The position numbers and the translations under genes were made by a program. The notes beneath the pieces are model-generated. The model did not search any database, was not told where the DNA came from, and worked only from the letters and a program-made list of their open reading frames with translations. A DNA stretch of 63,671 bases, the filler included, from Polymyxa betae A26-41 (lineage: Eukaryota; Protista; Endomyxa: Phytomyxea), in the NCBI GenBank assembly GCA_003693705.1. It is 6 parts of 6 records of this genome, joined end to end, with 100 filler letters (N's around TTAATTAATTAA, not from the genome) between each part and the next. Parts side by side here need not be neighbours in the genome. Positions count along the whole stretch, not along the records: positions 50,254 to 60,116 come from RBZT01000677.1; 5 more parts are not named here. One strand, 5' to 3'. Position 1 is the stretch's first letter. Every line of letters begins with the position of its first letter. Shown here in pieces: positions 50,254-60,116 of the stretch.

Positions 50254-51238
50254 AGTACGACCTGGGATTTCCGCTTCGATTTCTGAGACGGTTTCGATGA
50301 TGTTGGAAGGGCGGCGTTCATGGTCGGGATGGCGGCAGTTGTTGTTGTGCGGGCGGATTCCGTGGCGGACTGATCGAGGTCGAGAGCCGCGAATCGGTTG
50401 AGCCCGTTGTAGACCGGGACGGATTCGGAGGCGCGGCGGACCTGAGGTTTGGCCGTGCGGGATTTCGTCACCAGGTGGAACACATCGGGACGTTTCCTGT
50501 CTGCCGGGACCACGGACCGTACTGGACCCTGATCATCACCGGTAACCGAACTAACAAGGTATCAGCGCATCAGTGACATGGACAGGTTACGTTACCGGTC
50601 GATGCGAGCAGCGTCTTGATCCGGACCGAGATCCGCATCTGCAGAGGAAGGCGTCGCTGTAGAAGCGTCGTCATGGGCGGCGTCAATAGAGGAAAGTTGA
50701 GTGAGATCAGGTTCAGATTGGGATATTTCTGTCATAATGAAGGAGATGTCTTCCGGCGCATCTCGATGAAGATCCTCCTCTGTAGAGGGAGGAGTCTCAG
50801 GGATGTCATCAGCCGCCTCAGCCAGGTCAGGTTCCGAATCGCAGATTTCCGTGACGGTCGTCGTCGATTCGATCCGAATCCTGCGTGTTACGTTTCAGGA
50901 GGTCGAGACCAATGGAAACTGACAAGGCGGTCACGTTACATATTGTGATGGTCGGCGTCCGTGACGGAAGGTGACGGAGGCATTTCCAGGAGTCCACCGG
51001 CTGAGCTGCATTCGCATTCGGCATTGTCGGAGTCCGGATCGTACACGGACCCGCCAGACGATACATCGCCTGGGCCTCTCCATCCGATGCGATGATCCGG
51101 GGGCAGTACGACGACCTCTGGACGATGAAGGCCGGAACAGTGACAGGTCGGATTGCGCATGAAATGGTTCCAGCAGGTATCCAAGGGGACGTACGGCGTC
51201 GAGAACGACGACGACGAGGAGGTCGGCGGCGGCGCAGC
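50254..51238 (-). CDS. Gene A, 5' exons (CWNHFxRNPxCxC motif, acidic/Ser-Thr low complexity); continues at 60116
   Basis: In-frame GT-AG introns at ~50939-50881 and ~50595-50551. The last exon ends ...KSKRKSQ at 50262, followed by donor GTCGTA. Confidence 0.7.
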
Positions 51239-51536
51239 CTGTTGGGCATATTCAGCCAACCAGGGTAACGCTAAGCGGAAACGAAAGCGACATGAAACGA
51301 AACGTTGTCTGAATGATACAAAAATATATGGACATAATACAGCCCTGTATATGTCGGGAAATGTGTCGTACTGACCCAGTTGGTAACCGGAGCATATTGG
51401 TAGACGGCGCGGCCCAGTACTGTGCCTGAAGATGATTCGTTATGTGACGGGTCTAATAGTAGGGTTAGGGTTAGGGTTTTCGTAATCATACCGATCTATG
51501 ATAGAAGTTGTGATTGATAGCAGGATTTATAATATA

Positions 51537-51818
51537 CTATAGACAGATGAACATGATAGAGAGAGAGACCGGTAATACAGGACTTACAGCTGTAGGTGCG
51601 GCATAATACCAGACGGGGCCAGTATGACGATGATTCTGTTCGAAAACGAGACACTGGACGGAGTCGTGTTCGAATGAGCCTGATACCGGGTTAGGGTTAG
51701 GGTCTGGTCTGTAGTAGGTGGTCTCTGTATGATCTGAAGGAGGATCATAGGCATGACTGCCTGTACAGATCACAGCCAACACAATGCTGATCGACACGCA
51801 GGCAGTCAATATCATCAT
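51537..51818 (-). CDS. Signal-peptide-bearing exon: small secreted protein or true first exon of gene A
   Basis: MMILTACVSISIVLAVICTGSHA; GTAAGT donor after APTA; CTGAA..CAG acceptor just before the gene A exon at 51238. Confidence 0.55.
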   Translation of the reverse strand: MMILTACVSISIVLAVICTGSHAYDPPSDHTETTYYRPDPNPNPVSGSFEHDSVQCLVFEQNHRHTGPVWYYAAPTAVSPVLPVSLSIMFICL

Positions 51819-52239
51819 CGTCTTCTGGAAGCGATTCTCTGATAGTGATGGAGACGAGGCGGTGGTCTACGCAGTCCGTGATTCCAAACTGCGCCTTGGT
51901 CAAGCCTGCTTTAATCACTTTTCGGTTTTTTAGTCATTTTTCTTTTTTTTTTCTGGCAACGCGTTTGATGGATGTTTGGCGTTCTTTTGTTGTATTTTAA
52001 AGTCTACGCATGTTTTATATCAGTATGGGAACGAACCGCGTTTGAAACCCGGACAAAAAGCTACTTAATAAAGAGCTTCGTTACTGTCGCCATTTTGCAG
52101 TCGTTTGCACTTGAACCGGTGCGTTTTTAGCGGCTTTTCGAAATTTTTACATTTAATCAGGTGTTACTGTATGGTTTCCCGATAACCGTGACAGTATCGG
52201 CAACTTTCTTCGGGTTCTTTTCCACCCTCAATTGAGACC

Positions 52240-52410
52240 TGTATGTCCAGATCTCACTTTCTTCCGTCTGTATGAGGATACTACTTGCTGGAACCATTTC
52301 GTTCGCAATCCGAGATGTGATTGCTGTGAGGTCGAGATGATCCCTCCTCGCTCGTCAAGCCCTACCAGATCTCCCTGTTGGATTGGAGCGGGTGCGTCTC
52401 CTACCTGATC
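52240..52410 (+). pseudogene. Inverted degenerate copy of the gene A N-terminal motif
   Basis: TTCWNHFVRNPRCDC on + versus DTCWNHFMRNPTCHC on - at ~51135-51180. Confidence 0.6.
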
Positions 52411-52680
52411 GCTGCTCTCTTAAATCCTGCTGAGATGGCTGATTGTAACAAAGGCTCGAATTACTCGCATAACAAGGATCAAACCACATTCACGGAATAA
52501 CACGATACCCTGACGTTACCAAACCCTGACAATGTAACGCAGATGGTAACGTATTGCTGTACGAATCTAGCACAGTATTACCAGATAATCTACGAACATT
52601 TGCTAGAATACAGAAACGCCATACGAGGAGGAGTACGCCCTTCAGTAAGCTGAAATTTGAATTTAATTGCAGATCCCAAT

Positions 52681-53031
52681 GACTTAATGTCGTACTAGCC
52701 CTGTTTATCATCATACTGGCAGAATACCTTTACTGTAACGATTAAATCCGTTTAAGTTTACAGAAATAAGAATTTCCACTCCGTTCAATTTGAACATTTC
52801 CTTTAAAGTACATAATATATGTCAAACATAAAAAAAATGATTAAGGTTTTGGATAAAAGGAGGAACTTCTGCAAACTTGATAAAGCCCTAATTGAAAAGT
52901 ACAAAGTGTGGATAGCGGGAGTATATTGACTTAATGTAGTACTAGCCCTGATTGTCGTCAGACTGGCAGAATACATTTACTGTAACTTGTTAAGCCCTAA
53001 TTAAGAAGTACAAAATGTGGATGGCAGGAGA
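52681..53031. repeat. Short diverged direct repeats
   Basis: GACTTAATGT.GTACTAGCCCTG...ACTGTAAC at 52681 and 52929; AAGCCCTAATT.A.AAGTACAAA.TGTGGAT at ~52883 and ~52992. Confidence 0.75.
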
Positions 53032-53071
53032 TTGGTTTATACAGATATGTAACGGGAAAGGGTAGGGAACA

Positions 53072-54188
53072 CTAAAGCCCTAATCGGCGCAGGTTGGAAT
53101 GCGGACAGAGAATGGGATCGGCCCGGGAGTCGATGCGGCCTCCCCAGGCGTCGCAGAACTTGCGCACATCATCATGACAGTGATTACGCAGACACCAGAG
53201 CAGAGGCCACACCATCTGCAGGAACGATTTATTCATAAGACGAGGAATCGTCTCAAGTTGATTTCCGCCCAGTTTCAGATCGAGCGAGACCGCACAGATC
53301 AGCTGATCCAAGGTCGTCGTCGCCGAATGGAAATACTCGAACTCGGTGATGTCGACGTGCTGGCCCAGCGACGCCAACCAGAACGTCCGGCGTCTGCCGA
53401 ACAGCAGACGCGGCGCGAAATACGCGTGCAGGTCGAGGCCGCGGACGTACTCGACCAGCGACGCGTACACGTTGACGACGCCGAGATCCAGGTCCGTACG
53501 GGGCTCGTGCGCCCAGCCCTACGTTACATTACGATACCAACACACGAAACCGTTACAGATAGATAAAAAGGTGGACTGACGAAAAGGTTGGGTGACACGA
53601 CGGGTTCCGGTACAGTCTCCTGGCGGGGCGAGTCAGTAACATAACGGACGTGCATTACGTTACAGAAGTAATGTTACCAGCTGGGAGATCAGATCGTAGG
53701 TTGGAACGCAAGATAGACGAAGATCTAGATCCATGTCGATGTCGTCATCATCCTGATCGAACTGAAACGTTACCGGTTTGTTCGGCTCCGTGCAACTCGA
53801 CTGTACCCGACACGTTACCAATCGGTGACAGTCAAAAAGCGAAAAAAAACCAACGTTACACACCGATGGCAACGAGCTCTCGCCGACGCTAAGTGCCCCG
53901 TGATGAGCAGTATGATCACAAGCCTGTAACGTAACGTTGAGCAGTGAACACCAGCAGTAACGTAATCTCCGAACCAGTGACAGGCGTAGATCCAGATCGC
54001 TATGAGGCTGCAGTTCCGCAGCTTCATTTAGAGTCTGATCGTGTTTCAAGATCAGCGCAACAGAACGGTAACGTAACCATGTGGCGGACCTGAGAGAGCG
54101 GACTGCGTGTAGTGAATGTGGCATTGGCGTGGAGCGCCGTCAGAGTCGCCAGGCACAGGAGGCCGGCCAGAGAGGAGGTCGTCGTCAT
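53072..54188 (-). CDS. Predicted secreted protein with multiple EAR-like (LxLxL) motifs, ~6 exons
   Basis: Signal peptide MTTTSSLAGLLCLATLTALHANA. Five phase-0 GT-AG introns give a continuous frame. Motifs DLDLRLSL, MDLDLRLS and SLDLKLG. Confidence 0.68.
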
Positions 54189-54505
54189 GGGCGAAGCGAT
54201 TTTTTTTCCGAATGACGGAACGACGGAGGATCACGCAGTTTCGGCTCCGTGAGGGACCTGGGCCGCGATCCCGGGTCGGCTGTTCTCACAATCGGGGGCC
54301 GCCATCAGCCTGTCTATCACGGCTTTTGCCTGGTTACGGGACTGGATTCTGTCCATACCGTTAGGGTTTAGGGTTTCTCTACAACAATGAACCATACTGG
54401 AACCGTTCGCTCTAACAGACAGAGCGCTGTTTAGAAAAGGCGATCTTCGGAGATACCTAATTAACAATTAAAAAAAAAGCAAATCTACAAAACTACTGTA
54501 GATGG

Positions 54506-55000
54506 TGTTGGGGTGCTGGGTGCGAAGTCCTAGACGATGGATGCGATAAACTCAAACAACACAATCTCACACTCGGTGTGTATAGCTACTCTGATTTATT
54601 CGATATGTTTGTCGCACTTATAAAGTCCGCAGAATGTTCCACGCATGTTTCCACTGGAGCGGGGTGCGGCCATCTTACTCATTAGAATGATCCGAACACT
54701 CCAACAGCCCTCCCGATGGCCAAAACTCGCTCAGCAACTTATTGAACTTGAGGGGTCCCAGCGGTTTCGTCATTAAATCCGCTAGTTGAAATTCAGATGG
54801 TAGATATTTTAACTCGATCACCTTATTTTCCACCAGATTCTGCAAAAAATGAAATTTCGTGTAGATATGATTCGTCCGACTCGATAATTTCGGCTTGATA
54901 CACCATGAGATACAGGTTTGATTATCTTCAAATACTGGAACAGGAGCCGGGCAATATTGTAGCATGCCGAACTCGTCCATTAAGTTCTGAATCCATATTA
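54506..55000 (-). mobile_element. Ty1/copia 3' remnant: RNase H, PPT and 201-bp LTR
   Basis: VFEDNQ..RTNHI..FHFL..QLADLMTKPL. LTR TGTTG...CAACA at 54506-54706, with GGGAGGGC PPT on -. Confidence 0.9.
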
Positions 55001-55002
55001 GA

Positions 55003-55394
55003 AGAAGATGGCTCTGTCGTTCACGTTCACCATGGGCCTGCGTCTTAAGACGCTCTGTCAAAAGACCATCGACGCTATTCACAATCTCGATTTGACGACC
55101 GTCACCTCCCTCGATTTGAAAAACTTTTTACAACCGAACCTGTTGGAGACCTGCAAGACGATGATGACGATGTACAAGAACGAGGACCCAGAAGAAGATA
55201 ACGATCTCGTTCAATCCTGCATGCTGGCAGCCTTGCCTTTGCATTTGTTTTACGACCTCCATTTCCTCCTTGGAATGGGAACTGTCAATATCGGGAACTT
55301 GAAAGCTCCCGGAAAGCCGCTGGAGATTGTCGAGGTGATTGATGTCGATGGGAATGTGGAAGCCGCGGACGAGCAGCTGGAAATTGTTGACTAA
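55003..55394 (+). pseudogene. 5'-truncated inverted paralog of the gene A C-terminus
   Basis: LSFTFTMGLRLKTLCQKTIDA...GNLKAPGKPLEIVEVIDV matches 58032-58400 on -. Similarity extends ~150 bp into the 3' flank (55395-55540 vs 57890-58031). Confidence 0.88.
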
Positions 55395-56759
55395 ATGTCA
55401 CCAATTTCGTGGCAACTATATTTCACGTTACACATTTGACAAGACGATTTTTCTTGAAAAATAAAACATTCTCGATTTCGAAGACCAACCTTAAGTCGAT
55501 GCCAGAAAACTTGATCGTTCATGATCTGTCTGTAGAAGGCTGCGCATGAAACCCTTTCCCCGTAAATAGAGTTCTGATACGAAAAGTCGAAAACCTGGCT
55601 AATCTTAAATCATTATGGGTGTGTTTATCAGATCGCAAACCAATGTACGTCTTTATATTATATGTTAGTACAACATTCAGGTAGATCGGCAGAGAGTGCA
55701 GGGTTGAACCCTAACCCCCAACCCAATCAGGGAATACGTCGCCTTTGTGGTAGGGGATAGCGGCCGTTATTGATGTCCCAATCTCAGACAGCTCTTTCAA
55801 TAAGAGCGCCTTCTCATATATGAGCGGATCCTGGAATCTGTAAAAGCATCGCTGAGCTCATGAACGCCATTCAATGAAAATTAGAAGCAAACTCACCAAA
55901 CAAAGATGCCAAATTGTTTTACAAAGTTGAACTTCTACAAATGCAACCTTTGAGCAATTTGCAGCTTTTTGAAAAAATGAATATTTGTTTTCAGAATGGA
56001 AAAAGTTTTGCAAAATTTGATCAAGTTGATCGCATTCAAATTGTTGTTTGAACTAAACACGAAATTTTAAATTATTTACAGAATTAAAACCCTATTAAAA
56101 AGTGAAACACAAATATGAAACAGCTTTTCACAGAATGGGCTGGAAGTTTTTTACAACTTTTTTTAGCCCAAACTTGCAAGCGATCCGCCTTACATTGCAA
56201 GAATACAGGCCTTAGATCTGGCCGAACATCGGGCGAACAAACATTCCGACATTGGGCCCAGTATCGATCTCAATGCAAAATGCACTTCGATTCGATTCTG
56301 TTCGTCGACTTCTGTGAACAGGAGTTATATTCCAGCGCTACAAGACATCAGAAACCAGCCGACCGCGTCCGGACAGGGTCAGTACGACCGCCCGACCCGC
56401 CATCAGCGCACTGGATGATAGACGGCGAAAGGCGACCGCCTCCAGGCGCCTCAGAGGCCGTTCTTGATGATACGTGAAATACGATACGAACTCGATCTAG
56501 GAGTTGGAGCAATGTCAGCAGAGGTAACATAGCTAAAACAGGACCAACGTTACATGAAAACGTCAATAAATGGCGAATTAACGTAACATGAAAACGACAA
56601 TAAAAGGCGAAATCTTCATCAGCTGCAAACAGGTGATGGAGAGAGAGAGAGAGAGAGCAAAAATGTGTAACGTAATACTGTGAAATTACTCTTGGTGGAA
56701 ACGTAAAACCAGCGCGACCTCGATTTCGGGCCCAAGAATAAATATAATGCGAGAAACGA

Positions 56760-57206
56760 AATCAAGTAACGTGATACAGCAATGCTACAGTGCTATGGAA
56801 ATGTAAACCGGGCTCGACCTTGGATAGGGTTTGGGTCGAGTCGAGCTTGAGCTCGGCCACGGTCGCCTGAACGGCCTCGTCGGACACAACTATGATAGCG
56901 TTACATCGCAGTCACTGACAGCCGAGCCGATAACGTTACCAGGGGGCCGCCCCAGACCCTGACAGAGATCACATAAAAACCTAACGACAGTCAGTAACGC
57001 GGCCGTGCCGACATCTGTTTACGATACCGTCGCAGATCTTCGAACTGCCACTGATCCGTAAAGTAGTCGCCGGCTGCGAACAGGTCGAGCGCGTCCAACT
57101 CCGAAACGGTCGCGTCCGCCAGCGAGTGGATCAGAGCGACACGCGGCGAGGACGTTCTCATCAACAGTGAGTTTCCAACTGACAGAAACTGCGTCACTGC
57201 AGCCAA
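56760..57206 (-). CDS. Possible multi-exon hypothetical gene
   Basis: GC-rich coding-like segments (ORF 56991-57206; VSDEAVQATVAELKLD) separated by GT...AG intron-like stretches. Confidence 0.3.
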
Positions 57207-58031
57207 GTCACTATCACTATCGGCGACTGGCGCAGTTTTTGTGGCTCGGAGAACTGCTCTTCATGGTCGGATCGGCCATCCGCCGAGAGCCATTAACATT
57301 TGTGGTAAGTGGCGTGGCCCCAACTGAAGCTGAGAGATCTTAGAGCAGGCGAAGCGAAGCCAATCAACGTAATGTTACGAAGAGTCTTCATGAGAGGTGA
57401 TGCGGCGCTAAAAAACATGAAAAGTAATATAAAAAACAAAGACAAAAGAAACTAAGAAATAACAGTCTAAAAAACAAAATTAAAAATAATGTTGCAAGAA
57501 TTGATTGCAGGCAGATTCATAGGGAAATTTTCTCAGAGAAGATATCGTTCGGCGATTAAAACGACGGTCTTTCAGAGGCAGCAGTTAGATGCAGCCAAGA
57601 GATTATCGCTTTTCAAAGATCCGAGAAATGCACGCCTCTTAGATCTGTGTATCTAACTGGAATGTTCCTATATAGGAATCAAATCATTCGGATTTTTTTT
57701 TAAGTTTCACCTGGCTTAAACAACATCACAACATCGTTACATCATTGATGGATCGCGACTGAAATTGAATGCTTCAGGGCCAAATGTATTTCATACACGC
57801 AATCCAAGTGATGGAGAACGGGAAACTAAAACGAGGAAGACGGAACCCTACGATAATTGATAACCACGACCAGAATTCGCTCATTAAACTTCTCTACAGA
57901 CGGATCGTGAACGATCAAGTTTTCTGGCATGGTAAGGCAGGTCTGCGAAATCGAAAATGTTTTTTATTCAAAAAAAAATCGTCTTGTCAAAAGTGTAATG
58001 TGAAATATCTTTGCCACGATAAAGGTGACTT

Positions 58032-60116
58032 TTAGTCAGCAATTTCCAGCTGCATCTCAGCGGCTTCCACATTCCCTTCAACATCAATTACCTCAACAAT
58101 TTCCAGCGGCTTTCCAGGAGCTTTCAAATTCCCGACACTGACAGTAACCATGTCGAGGAGGAAAATGACGTCGTATAAGGCTGCCAGCATGCAGGAATGA
58201 ACGAGATCTTCACCATCCTCGGGCTTCTCGTACATCGTCATGATAGTCTTGCAGGTCGCCAACAGCGACGGTCGTAAAAAATTCTTCAAATCGACGAAAC
58301 GGACGTTCGTCACAGCCAAACGTTCAAAAGCGTCGATGGTCTTTTGGCAGAGCGTCTTAAGACGCAGGCCCATGGTGAACGTGTACGACAGAACCAACTT
58401 CTTCTTCAGCGCCTGAACACACCGCAAAGTTTGGTTGAGGAAGACTGCGGCGACACCCGCGAACCGATCGCCGTCGTACTCGGCGTACTTGACCTTGAGA
58501 CGTTCGGTGATCAGGTCTCGCATCTGGTCGAGCCATTCGTCCTGTTTCTGAAGGAGGATTTGGACAACAATGTTCATATCGGCACGAAGTGCAACCGAGA
58601 GCTGCTTCGTCCACGATTTCGTCAATAGCTCAAGCATGAGCGAATCCGGAGACAGGAAGGAAGGCGGGAGACCGACAGCGGAGCCATTCAAAACTATAGA
58701 ATCGACATTAGCAGGCGTTCTGTAAATCAGCAAAACTGACTTCATAAATTTGAAAATATTTCTCTTCTAAAACCCGATTAGCGGGGTTTCTTGTAAAATC
58801 AGCAAAAAAAAAGGAAAAATGTCTTGTTAAAATCTAGATTTGTTCTTTTACAACCCGATTACAATTCAGGGAAAAATACTGTAAAAAAAGCAGAAAACTG
58901 AGCACATACTTTCATTGATATTTCTGGGCATCTCCTCAAACAAGCAGAATAACGCGAGATCTTCCGAATCCTTTCACAACCTCAATCTCAAACATCATCA
59001 GATCGCAGAACAGGTTTTACCAGATCTTCTTCTGATCCAGGACGAAATCGTGATGCATTCCCATCCATACACAGATTAATATAAGGAATATAAGGGCGTT
59101 CATCAATAAGAGCGTCTTCAAGACGCTGTCGCAGATCCTCAATAATCGCCTCGTGCATCTCCTCATCCAGCAGAACCAACTCCCGCGACGCCTCCCCAAC
59201 TGCTAAGATCCGTACGGCGTCCGTCACGATATTGATGAAATCGCCAATCGTTCCCGCCTCGTCTTCAAGGCCGCATTCCTTCTGCAGATCGCAGCGCAGA
59301 CAGGTCGTGATGATCCCGATCTGGGCCATGGCCGTCTCCAGCGCGCTGGCAGCTTCCCGGATGGGCCAGTACGCCCCCGGGGCCGCCCGGTAATGCGGCA
59401 AACGCATCGTGAACGAGCTTCGGAGCATTTCTAGCGCGTTCGAGGCCGTTTGCGTGGCGATGACGTTGTCGATGACGTCCAGATCGACGCCGTCGATGGC
59501 GGCGGCGTATCGGTCCAGCGAATCGTACAGAGCGACGACGGAGTCGTGGCGGAAGGCGTCGACCAGGTCGCGAATCGGTCCGTCATCAATGACGAAGCCG
59601 CGGACCGAATACGACAGACAGATCAGGTCGTGGAACGCGAACGTGTCCGGATCATCCGACGACGTCTCATACGGCAGCTCTGTCAGAGCAGTCAGAACAT
59701 CCCGGAAGCAAAAAAACCCCGTGGGCGGCGGGTCGTACTGTCCAGACGAGCCTTGTGCAGGTCGAGCAGGAGGCGGTGCAGCGCCGTGATCGGCTTAGCC
59801 TACGACGAACAGTCAGGGAGAGGCCGTCGACGAGGGGCGGGTACGACCTCGACCATGCGACGGACGTGATCGAATAAGGTGTCGATCATGCGGCGGGATC
59901 GGGCCCGGTGGGCGGCGTCGCGATCGTCGTCGGGGGCGGGCGTGACGGCGACGACGATCTCGGAAGGCGACGTTGTCGTCGTCGCTCGGACAGATGCAGA
60001 GCTGCTCGATCTCCGGACTTTGCCGTGACCAGGTTTCTTCTTCGACAAATTCCAAAGTCAGCGGTGTCCGGTAGGGTCCGGTCCGGGGGGGGGCGAGTAC
60101 GACCTGGGATTTCCGC
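58032..60116 (-). CDS. Gene A, 3' exons (helical orphan domain; ends in acidic SIM-like EIVEVIDVE)
   Basis: Acceptor at 60040 (branch CTGAC at 60061-60057) gives KKPGHGKVRR... Further in-frame introns lead into ORF 58988-59428 and, by inferred splicing, into ORF 58032-58745. Confidence 0.7.

What the first reader, a model, noticed from the sequence alone, without database searches (positions are those of the whole stretch)
50254..60116. A ~9.84-kb circular or tandemly amplified gene cassette: contig ends overlap by 21 nt and a spliced gene reads through the junction
Seen in sequence: the first and last 21 nt of this contig are identical. Joining them on the - strand gives exon ...KSKRKSQ, then a 64-nt intron (GTCGTA...CTGAC...AAG), then exon KKPGHGKVRR in frame, so gene A is circularly permuted. 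No other complete contig in the window shows such an overlap. The unit has no recognisable transposase, integrase or replicase; it carries secreted or orphan intron-containing genes, telomere-like motifs and a copia remnant. Inference: a collapsed head-to-tail array (effector copy-number amplification) or extrachromosomal circular DNA. The old copia insertion favours a chromosomal origin.
Basis: partly seen in the sequence, partly recalled or inferred. Interest (0 to 1): 0.8.

Follow-up and report, generated by a model that had tools for sequence, protein, structure and literature searches.

The report
Pseudo-circular contig between two gene copies
The contig really does begin and end with the same 21 bases, but they sit exactly where a second copy of the same orphan gene joins the assembly graph and read depth shows no extra copies, so this is most likely an ordinary single-copy chromosomal stretch, not a circle or an amplified array.

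Summary
The first and last 21 nt are identical, and exactly 21 nt. Joining them gives an in-frame exon, a 64-nt GT..AG intron, then another exon. The joined gene ("gene A", about 3 kb, - strand) is collinear with a distant homologue.

The interpretation (collapsed amplified array or eccDNA) is not supported.
- In an independent k=31 assembly of the best-matching run (X1), the contig over the right end stops 30 nt into the 21-mer. This is the signature of a graph branch at its first base.
- A second sequence ("form 2") enters the same 21-mer. It is a gene-A copy that lacks exon 2.
- Form 1 and form 2 have equal depth (267-280 vs 292). The rest of the unit is not deeper (161-204).
- A second strain (X2) has the backbone at 100% identity and single depth. 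It lacks 58433-60084, the segment that would close the circle, and carries only form 2.

Most likely reading (0.6): a single-copy segment whose two ends lie in two copies of a multi-copy orphan gene family, cut at a shared k-mer.

One thing remains intriguing. The only full-length relative found (metagenome contig L001) sits on a clean 7,071-nt cyclic contig, seen in two independent data sets.

The parts
50254..50274 (.). Terminal 21-mer, left copy. On the - strand it holds the last 13 nt of a gene-A exon and the donor GTCGTACT.
60096..60116 (.). Terminal 21-mer, right copy. The k=31 graph of run X1 branches at its first base, and two different upstream sequences (form 1 and form 2) merge here.
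   Evidence: record 8 covers 59856-60116 plus 9 nt, so it ends at 60096+29. The form-2 contig aligns from 60085 and runs over the end. The depth of bin 59917-60116 (314.1) equals exactly these two contigs.
50262..51259 (-). Gene A, 5' half. The exons are ..51259-50940 (conserved motif YVPLDTCWNHFMRNPTCHC), 50880-50596 and 50550-50262 (ends KSKRKSQ). Predicted introns are 50939-50881 and 50595-50551. The start codon was not settled.
   Evidence: The motif matches L001 (79% over 19 aa). NRFAAL.. is also conserved.
60040..60103 (-). The 64-nt intron that follows the KSKRKSQ exon if the ends are joined (GTCGTA..CTGAC..AAG). It lies entirely at the right end of the piece, next to a G9 run at 60085-60093.
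   Evidence: Not confirmed by RNA.
59848..60039 (-). Gene A exon 2 (192 nt, 64 codons, KKPGHGKV..VRRMVE). It is present in form 1 and absent from form 2. Its counterpart in L001 lies in one ORF with no intron on either side of it.
   Evidence: (joint 59808>60085 with 26 other letters)
58910..59799 (-). Gene A exons 3-5: 59799-59739, 59679-59021 and 58970-58910. Introns are 59847-59800, 59738-59680 and 59020-58971. An all-helical orphan domain.
   Evidence: RNA joints 59679>59739 (X3, X7) and 58969>59020 (X3). (three weak relatives)..
58032..58745 (-). ORF P2 (237 aa). It is probably the 3' part of gene A, because the homologue P0003 carries both domains in one ORF. Its C-terminal half forms one arm of the inverted repeat. 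Strain X2 departs from the window at 58432, inside this ORF.
55000..55536 (+). Inverted copy (81-84% identity) of 57893-58405. It is a P-family fragment (P1, C-terminal 128 aa) cut off at 55000, where the copia remnant begins.
54360..55000 (-). 5'-truncated Ty1/copia remnant (Pol C-terminal tail plus downstream sequence), a high-copy repeat.
   Evidence: depth up to 2316 in X1 and 214 in X2, and other copies run on past 54360 and 55000.
55415..57197 (-). Transcribed multi-exon gene M between the inverted-repeat arms. RNA contigs define introns 55599-55648, 55838-56193, 56312-56363, 56497-56818, 56890-56939 and 56979-57025.
   Evidence: (X3 and X7, all CT..AC on the + strand)
53716..54535 (-). 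Transcribed region downstream of the copia remnant, with an intron at 54349-54397. It includes ORF 53660-54124.
   Evidence: (X3 record 17)
52157..52405 (+). Divergently oriented open frame carrying a second copy of the TCWNHFxRNPxCxC motif (inverted repeat with 51138-51179). TTAGGG runs lie in the spacer between the two.

Best explanation
The piece is a single-copy chromosomal segment, not a circle and not a collapsed array. Its two ends lie in two copies of one multi-copy orphan gene family (gene A). The left end holds the 5' half of one copy. The right end holds exon 2 onward of another copy (form 1). The copies share an identical stretch that begins at the last codons of the KSKRKSQ exon and its splice donor. 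The short-k assembler reached the same k-mer vertex from both sides, which left the same 21 nt on both ends.

Shown: a branch at the first base of the 21-mer, a second sequence entering it, equal depth of the two forms, and a strain without the closing segment.

Inferred: the second copy has its own 5' half beyond the contig end, so the copies are tandem neighbours about 9.8 kb apart, or the contig hops between family members. In a second strain the 5' half is partnered by form 2.
For: 1. One search, run X1 (0.97 of the words, k=31 contigs). Record 8 covers 59856-60116 and stops 9 nt further on, at 60096+29. A unitig ends there when a second predecessor joins at 60096. That is the first base of the 21-mer, so the break is not an arbitrary cut of a free cycle.
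2. One search, joints and table 5c. In X1 and X2 a contig runs 59732-59808, then 26 other letters, then 60085 and past the end. Read on the - strand, this is the same donor followed by a single intron of about 54 nt that splices onto exon 3. It is a gene-A copy without exon 2 (form 2).
3. Depth in X1. Form 1-specific contigs are at 267 and 280, form 2 at 292. The other form 1-side contig (58530-58976) is at 204, against 187-201 for its paralogous contigs. The backbone is at 161-183. An array or circle of N units predicts form 1 = N x form 2 and backbone = form 1.
4. Run X2 (another sample and study). The backbone 54117-54535 and 55386-58206 shows 0 differences at depth 12-14, and form 2 is at 13.4. 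Depth over 59317-59716 is 0, and a loose end leaves the window at 58432. That strain cannot close the same circle.
5. The family is multi-copy. There are inverted P1/P2 copies, a third P variant at 92% in X2, X3 and X7, and a 55000-to-58925 opposite-strand RNA joint.
6. Exon 2 is 192 nt and the introns on both sides are phase 0. Any family member's 5' half therefore reads in frame across the join, so the in-frame reading does not argue for a circle.
Against: - I therefore did not see whether a second, divergent 5' half exists, nor whether 50254 onward has double depth.
- Depths are contig means of k-mer counts, and no genome-wide baseline is available. The 1.7-fold spread inside the unit has to be put down to GC bias (GC 0.44 against 0.60).
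- The only full-length homologue found (L001) lies on a clean 7,071-nt cyclic contig in two data sets. Cyclic or tandem organisation may therefore be a real trait of this family.
- The assembler and its k are not known to me.
Confidence: 0.6

Rival explanations
1. A real head-to-tail duplication in the X1 strain. Two or a few near-identical 9.84-kb units stand in tandem, for instance made by unequal crossing-over between two gene-A copies. Form 2 would be the entry from the left flank.
For: - The contig closes on itself with no other break and reads as one coherent gene, collinear with L001's gene across the join.
- A graph in which one extra edge enters a loop is what a tandem duplication gives.
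- X1 and X2 are identical in the backbone but differ structurally at 58433-60095, which suggests recent recombination here.
- A related gene sits on a cyclic contig.
Against: - Two units predict form 1: form 2 = 2:1 and backbone = form 1. Observed values are 0.92-0.96: 1, and the backbone is lower than form 1.
- There are no variant bubbles in the backbone.
- X2 shows everything at 1x.
Confidence: 0.2
2. The contig is a chimera. The assembler hopped between two family members inside the multi-copy stretch around 58366-58530. The right 1.6 kb would then belong to another locus, and both pieces happen to end at the shared 21-mer.
For: - In X1 the bin 58317-58516 has depth 723, so several family members share it.
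- The k=31 contigs break at 58206-58366 and 58530.
- X2 leaves the window at 58432.
Against: - The 237-aa ORF stays open through the spot.
- X1 holds 58530-58976 at 100% identity.
- No loose end at 58432 is listed for X1, although only 6 rows per run were shown.
Confidence: 0.12
3. An extrachromosomal circular DNA (eccDNA or plasmid-like episome) of 9,842 bp.
For: - Terminal identity.
- A homologous gene on a 7,071-nt cyclic contig assembled in two unrelated samples, which suggests a high-copy element there.
Against: - The cycle is not isolated in the graph, since form 2 enters it.
- There is no depth excess.
- No replication or partition gene was found.
- The backbone occurs in X2 in a different context.
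- The ratio of unit depth to copia-family depth is the same in both strains (about 14 and 16), as expected for a stable chromosomal copy.
Confidence: 0.05

Closest known systems
Repeat-bounded ('loop edge') contigs of de Bruijn-graph assemblers (own knowledge of how such graphs work)
   Same: Both ends carry the same k-mer, of exactly one word length. An independent assembly branches at that k-mer, and a second path enters it.
   Different: The repeat is not a transposon or rDNA. It is a short identical stretch at an exon/intron boundary shared by copies of an orphan gene.
Clusters of tandem or inverted paralogous genes in TE-associated, strain-variable regions of filamentous eukaryotic microbes (own knowledge)
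   Same: Orphan intron-bearing genes, inverted and direct paralogues, a copia fragment at a rearrangement breakpoint, and presence/absence differences between strains whose flanks are otherwise identical.
   Different: No signal for secretion or for any function was tested. The family has almost no relatives: 3 among 1.84 billion representatives.
eccDNA and collapsed tandem amplifications
   Same: Self-overlapping contig ends and no replicase.
   Different: No depth excess, the cycle is not isolated, and the closing segment is missing in a second strain.
Metagenome contig L001 (JGI 3300043413, Ga0451711_0001755), a 7,071-nt cycle
   Same: It carries a collinear homologue of gene A: the CWNHF exon, an exon-2-like part, the helical domain and the KYxxYDGDRF part. 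It also has short intron-like gaps and no Pfam domains.
   Different: Its cycle is clean. The overlap is 121 nt, and a second assembly (Logan, SRR35185531) is permuted, with its break elsewhere. The cargo differs, protein identity is only 27-40%, and the organism is unknown.

Membership tests
Extrachromosomal circular DNA / plasmid | Isolated cycle in the assembly graph (no other path enters or leaves) | tested here: not met
   the form-2 contig enters the 21-mer, and the X1 k=31 contig ends at 60096+29.
Extrachromosomal circular DNA / plasmid | Copy number that differs from chromosomal relatives | tested here: not met
   form 1 at 267-280 against form 2 at 292, backbone at 161-204, and in X2 everything at 12-14.
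Extrachromosomal circular DNA / plasmid | Replication or maintenance gene | tested here: not met
   no Pfam family reached its curated cut-off on any of the 20 frames.
Extrachromosomal circular DNA / plasmid | Junction resistant to exonuclease; reads that close the circle | not testable with these tools
   Only contigs were held for these runs, the single read-laying run covered the right 6 kb, and the junction partner lies outside it.
Collapsed tandem array of identical units | Unit depth is a multiple of that of single-copy relatives | tested here: not met
   same figures as above. No genome-wide baseline was available, so the comparison is with paralogous contigs only.
Collapsed tandem array of identical units | Unit-to-unit junction present in other isolates | tested here: not met
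   X2 lacks 58433-60084 and has only form 2 in front of the 21-mer.
Repeat-bounded contig (assembly artefact) | Terminal identity of exactly one k-mer, with a graph branch at that k-mer in an independent assembly | tested here: met
Repeat-bounded contig (assembly artefact) | A second, different continuation beyond the shared stretch (the other copy's own 5' half) | not tested
Ty1/copia retrotransposon (remnant at 54360-55000) | Pol C-terminal (RNase H tail) similarity | tested here: met
   score 0.95, with 30 of 30 nearest clusters named Pol polyprotein TNT 1-94.
Ty1/copia retrotransposon (remnant at 54360-55000) | Multi-copy in the genome | tested here: met
   depth 1901-2316 in X1 against 161-290 beside it.
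Ty1/copia retrotransposon (remnant at 54360-55000) | RT, integrase, gag and paired LTRs | tested here: not met
   Searches found no RVT_2/rve. The element stops at 55000, so it is a fragment and not an element.

The most novel reading that the evidence does not exclude
Gene A marks a so far undescribed kind of 7-10 kb cyclic gene unit (a high-copy tandem repeat or a nuclear episome) in a poorly sampled eukaryotic lineage. The unit would carry one conserved multi-exon orphan gene plus variable cargo. L001 would be a homogeneous member. The window's unit would be one period of a heterogeneous, strain-variable array whose periods recombine at the conserved exon-1/intron-1 boundary. L001's own contig ends also fall at that homologous spot.
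Probability: 0.2. Interest if true: 0.65.

Novelty: not a real feature. Interest (0 to 1): 0.3.

Why it matters
If the circle or array were real, it would be a rare documented case of gene amplification or eccDNA carrying orphan genes in a eukaryotic microbe. The evidence points the other way, and the case has practical value. A self-overlap of exactly one k-mer on a short-read contig is not evidence of circularity when the k-mer lies in a gene family.

Three real features remain:
- a strain-variable cluster of an almost relative-less, transcribed gene family
- a rearrangement breakpoint marked by a copia fragment
- a distant homologue on a truly cyclic 7-kb contig, which deserves its own look

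Tried and rejected
- Exact-product look-ups for six ORFs of the piece found nothing on record, so no other assembly of the locus could be fetched.
- Word-based homologue searches were blank for the 237-aa ORF, gene A exon 4 and the copia fragment.
- The exhaustive search with exon 4 gave only three weak relatives.
- A junction-side 38-mer was absent from the JGI metagenome contigs.
- Profile scans failed. A1 had no stretch conserved enough to search with. The CWNHF profile matched 14 stretches, but none passed tblastn. P0003 found nothing in viral contigs.
- The AlphaFold model of exon 4 was poor (pLDDT 47, all helical), so I ran no fold search.
- The Atlas search with exon 4 gave no usable hit.
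- A kinase-like impression of L001's - strand gene was not borne out by Pfam, and I dropped it.
- A literature search on circular-contig artefacts gave nothing specific.
- The organism was not identified. RNA runs labelled with other organisms hold its transcripts at 100% identity, which would fit a parasite or symbiont, but that is a guess.
Searches were done exon by exon, by reference.
Full report
**1. The observation**

The piece is 9,863 nt long (50254-60116). Its first and last 21 nt are identical. The identity stops at 21, and no third copy exists even with three mismatches.

Read on the - strand, the 21-mer is GCGGAAATCCCAG|GTCGTACT. It holds the last 13 nt of an exon (...KSKRKSQ) and a splice donor. 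If the ends are joined, a 64-nt intron follows (donor at 50261 = 60103, CTGAC branch, acceptor AAG at 60040). Exon 2 then starts at 60039 with KKPGHGKVRR, in frame.

- Pfam found no family above its curated cut-off on 20 frames.
- Rfam and tRNA scans were blank.
- TTAGGG runs occur at 51459-51478 and 51688-51703, with 3 matches against 0.02 expected.
- The copia fragment at 54360-55000 is the C-terminal tail of Pol (Atlas score 0.95, 30 of 30 nearest clusters). It is a high-copy repeat.

**2. Anatomy**

| Part | Coordinates | Support |
|---|---|---|
| Exon with motif YVPLDTCWNHFMRNPTCHC | ..51259-50940 | |
| Intron | 50939-50881 | predicted |
| Exon | 50880-50596 | |
| Intron | 50595-50551 | predicted |
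| Exon (ends KSKRKSQ) | 50550-50262 | |
| Junction intron (64 nt) | 50261 (= 60103) to 60040 | predicted |
| Exon 2 (192 nt) | 60039-59848 | |
| Intron | 59847-59800 | roughly matched by an X7 RNA joint |
| Exon 3 | 59799-59739 | |
| Intron | 59738-59680 | RNA joints in X3 and X7 |
| Exon 4 | 59679-59021 | |
| Intron | 59020-58971 | RNA joint in X3 |
| Exon 5 | 58970-58910 | another donor follows at 58909 |

The 237-aa ORF P2 (58745-58032) probably belongs to the same gene. The homologue P0003 carries both the exon-4 domain and the KYxxYDGDRF part of P2 in one ORF.

The rest of the unit holds:
- a divergent frame with a second CWNHF motif (52157-52405)
- a transcribed region at 53716-54535
- the copia fragment
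- a truncated inverted P copy (55000-55536, 81-84% identical to 57893-58405)
- between the inverted arms, a spliced - strand gene M with six RNA-defined introns

**3. The public runs**

All holders are kept as k=31 contigs, so depth is a mean per contig and no raw read can be followed. X1 (0.97 of the words) and X2 (0.80, another study) behave as DNA. X3 and X7 carry more than ten canonical GT..AG skips, so they are RNA. I laid the right-hand 6 kb (54117-60116).

Four results bear on the claim.

(a) X1's contig over the right end (record 8, 270 nt) covers 59856-60116 and stops 9 nt further on, at 60096+29. In a k=31 graph a contig ends there when the k-mer starting at 60096 has two predecessors. 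The first base of the 21-mer is therefore a branch point, not an arbitrary cut of a free cycle.

(b) The second predecessor is visible. In X1 and X2 a contig runs 59732-59808, then 26 other letters, then 60085 onward and over the end. On the - strand this reads as the same donor followed by one intron of about 54 nt that splices straight onto exon 3. It is a gene-A copy without exon 2 ("form 2"). The depth of the last bin (314.1) is exactly record 8 plus the 32 nt of this contig, so only these two forms meet there.

(c) Depths in X1:

| Sequence | Depth |
|---|---|
| Form 1-specific contigs | 267 and 280 |
| Form 2 | 292 |
| 58530-58976 | 204 |
| Its paralogous contigs | 187-201 |
| Backbone | 161-183 |

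An array or circle of N units demands form 1 = N x form 2 and backbone = form 1. The figures give N = 1. The 1.7-fold spread tracks GC content (0.44 against 0.60).

(d) X2 has the backbone with zero differences (54117-54535 and 55386-58206) at depth 12-14, and form 2 at 13.4. It has nothing at 59317-59716, and it leaves the window at 58432. That strain cannot close this circle, and its 5' half of gene A is partnered by form 2. The ratio of the copia family to the unit is about 14 in X1 and 16 in X2, as expected for a stable chromosomal copy.

**4. Reading**

Exon 2 is 192 nt and the introns on both sides are phase 0. The 5' half of any family member therefore reads in frame across the join, and the in-frame reading does not discriminate between the models.

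The most economical model has two gene-A copies sharing an identical stretch from the end of the KSKRKSQ exon into the donor. The contig runs from that stretch in one copy, through about 7.7 kb of neighbours, to the same stretch in the next copy. The assembler (short k, with repeat resolution, since it passed through the copia repeat) stopped at the shared vertex on both sides.

I could not see the first 3.9 kb in the runs. The other copy's own 5' half is therefore inferred, not shown. I put this reading at 0.6, a true 2-copy tandem duplication at 0.2, a chimeric contig at 0.12 and an episome at 0.05.

**5. Relatives**

The family is almost without relatives. The word-based searches were blank. 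The exhaustive search of 1.84 billion representatives with exon 4 gave three hits:
- Two are partial 'Beta vulgaris' hypothetical proteins on contigs of 632 and 719 nt. These look like foreign DNA in that assembly.
- The third is P0003, on a JGI metagenome contig (L001).

L001 is notable in three ways:
- It has a 121-nt terminal overlap, giving a unit of 7,071 nt.
- A Logan contig of an unrelated run (SRR35185531, 7,093 nt) carries the same genes in circularly permuted order, with its break about 2.5 kb away. That cycle is therefore clean and reproducible.
- Its gene-A homologue is collinear with the window's gene across the window's junction: the CWNHF exon, NRFAAL.., an exon-2-like stretch, the helical domain and the YDGDRF part.

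This shows that form 1's exon 2 is ancestral and that the joined architecture is the family's normal one. It also keeps alive the idea that tandem or cyclic organisation is a trait of the family. L001's overlap also ends at the codons homologous to the window's 21-mer (...TKRK| against ...KRKSQ|). The chance of that is about 2%, and I cannot explain it.

**6. What was left out**

**7. Verdict**

The interpretation as an amplified array or eccDNA is not supported. The most likely reading is a pseudo-circular contig bounded by two copies of an orphan gene. Interest is 0.3. The residual novel reading (a family of cyclic gene units) gets 0.2.

Noticed in passing
L001:1-7192 (JGI 3300043413 Ga0451711_0001755): A metagenome contig of 7,192 nt with a 121-nt terminal overlap (unit 7,071 nt). 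A Logan contig of SRR35185531 (7,093 nt) holds the same genes in permuted order. It carries the only full-length homologue of gene A found, and none of its ORFs reaches a Pfam cut-off. It is either a real cyclic or high-copy tandem element of an unknown eukaryote.
   Followed up: partly
L001:100-125 against window 50254-50274: L001's terminal overlap ends at the codons (..ATKRK|) homologous to the window's 21-mer (..KRKSQ|donor). Both cyclic contigs are cut at the same spot of the gene. The chance of this is about 2%, and it is unexplained.
   Followed up: no
window 51137-51193 (-) and 52283-52342 (+); L001:6472-6528: The motif YVPL.TCWNHFxRNPxCxC is invariant in three copies. It is 84-90% identical at the DNA level between the window and L001, although the proteins are otherwise about 27% identical. 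In the window the two copies face each other head to head, 1.1 kb apart.
   Followed up: partly
window 51459-51478 and 51688-51703: Two TTAGGG runs (3 matches against 0.02 expected) lie in the spacer between the two divergent CWNHF-motif genes. They are interstitial, not terminal, and may be a promoter element.
   Followed up: no
window 58432: Strain X2 is identical to the window up to 58432, inside ORF P2. It then continues with other sequence that, on the - strand, supplies an ATG (MARKLEVR..). This is a presence/absence or replacement polymorphism of 58433-60084 in an otherwise identical background.
   Followed up: partly
window 55000 and 58925: RNA contigs of X3 and X7 join 58970-58925 (- strand) directly to 55000 onward (+ strand), in frame (..FEEMP|KKKMALSF..). 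They come from a further family member in which the gene-A 3' exon is fused to a P domain. A third P variant (92% identical to 55000-55395) is present in X2, X3 and X7 but not in X1.
   Followed up: no
runs X3-X7 and X9-X17: Runs labelled with four other organisms hold parts of the unit, and the RNA runs hold its exons at 100% identity. The source organism may therefore live in or on other organisms. It was not identified.
   Followed up: no
P0001, P0002: Two 'Beta vulgaris' hypothetical partial proteins on contigs of 632 and 719 nt are gene-A relatives (28-41% identity). They are probably foreign DNA in that plant assembly.
   Followed up: no
window 60085-60093: A G9 homopolymer lies two bases before the 21-mer. 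Form 1 and form 2 agree from this run onward by alignment, but their k-mers merge only at 60096, so they differ at 60095.
   Followed up: no
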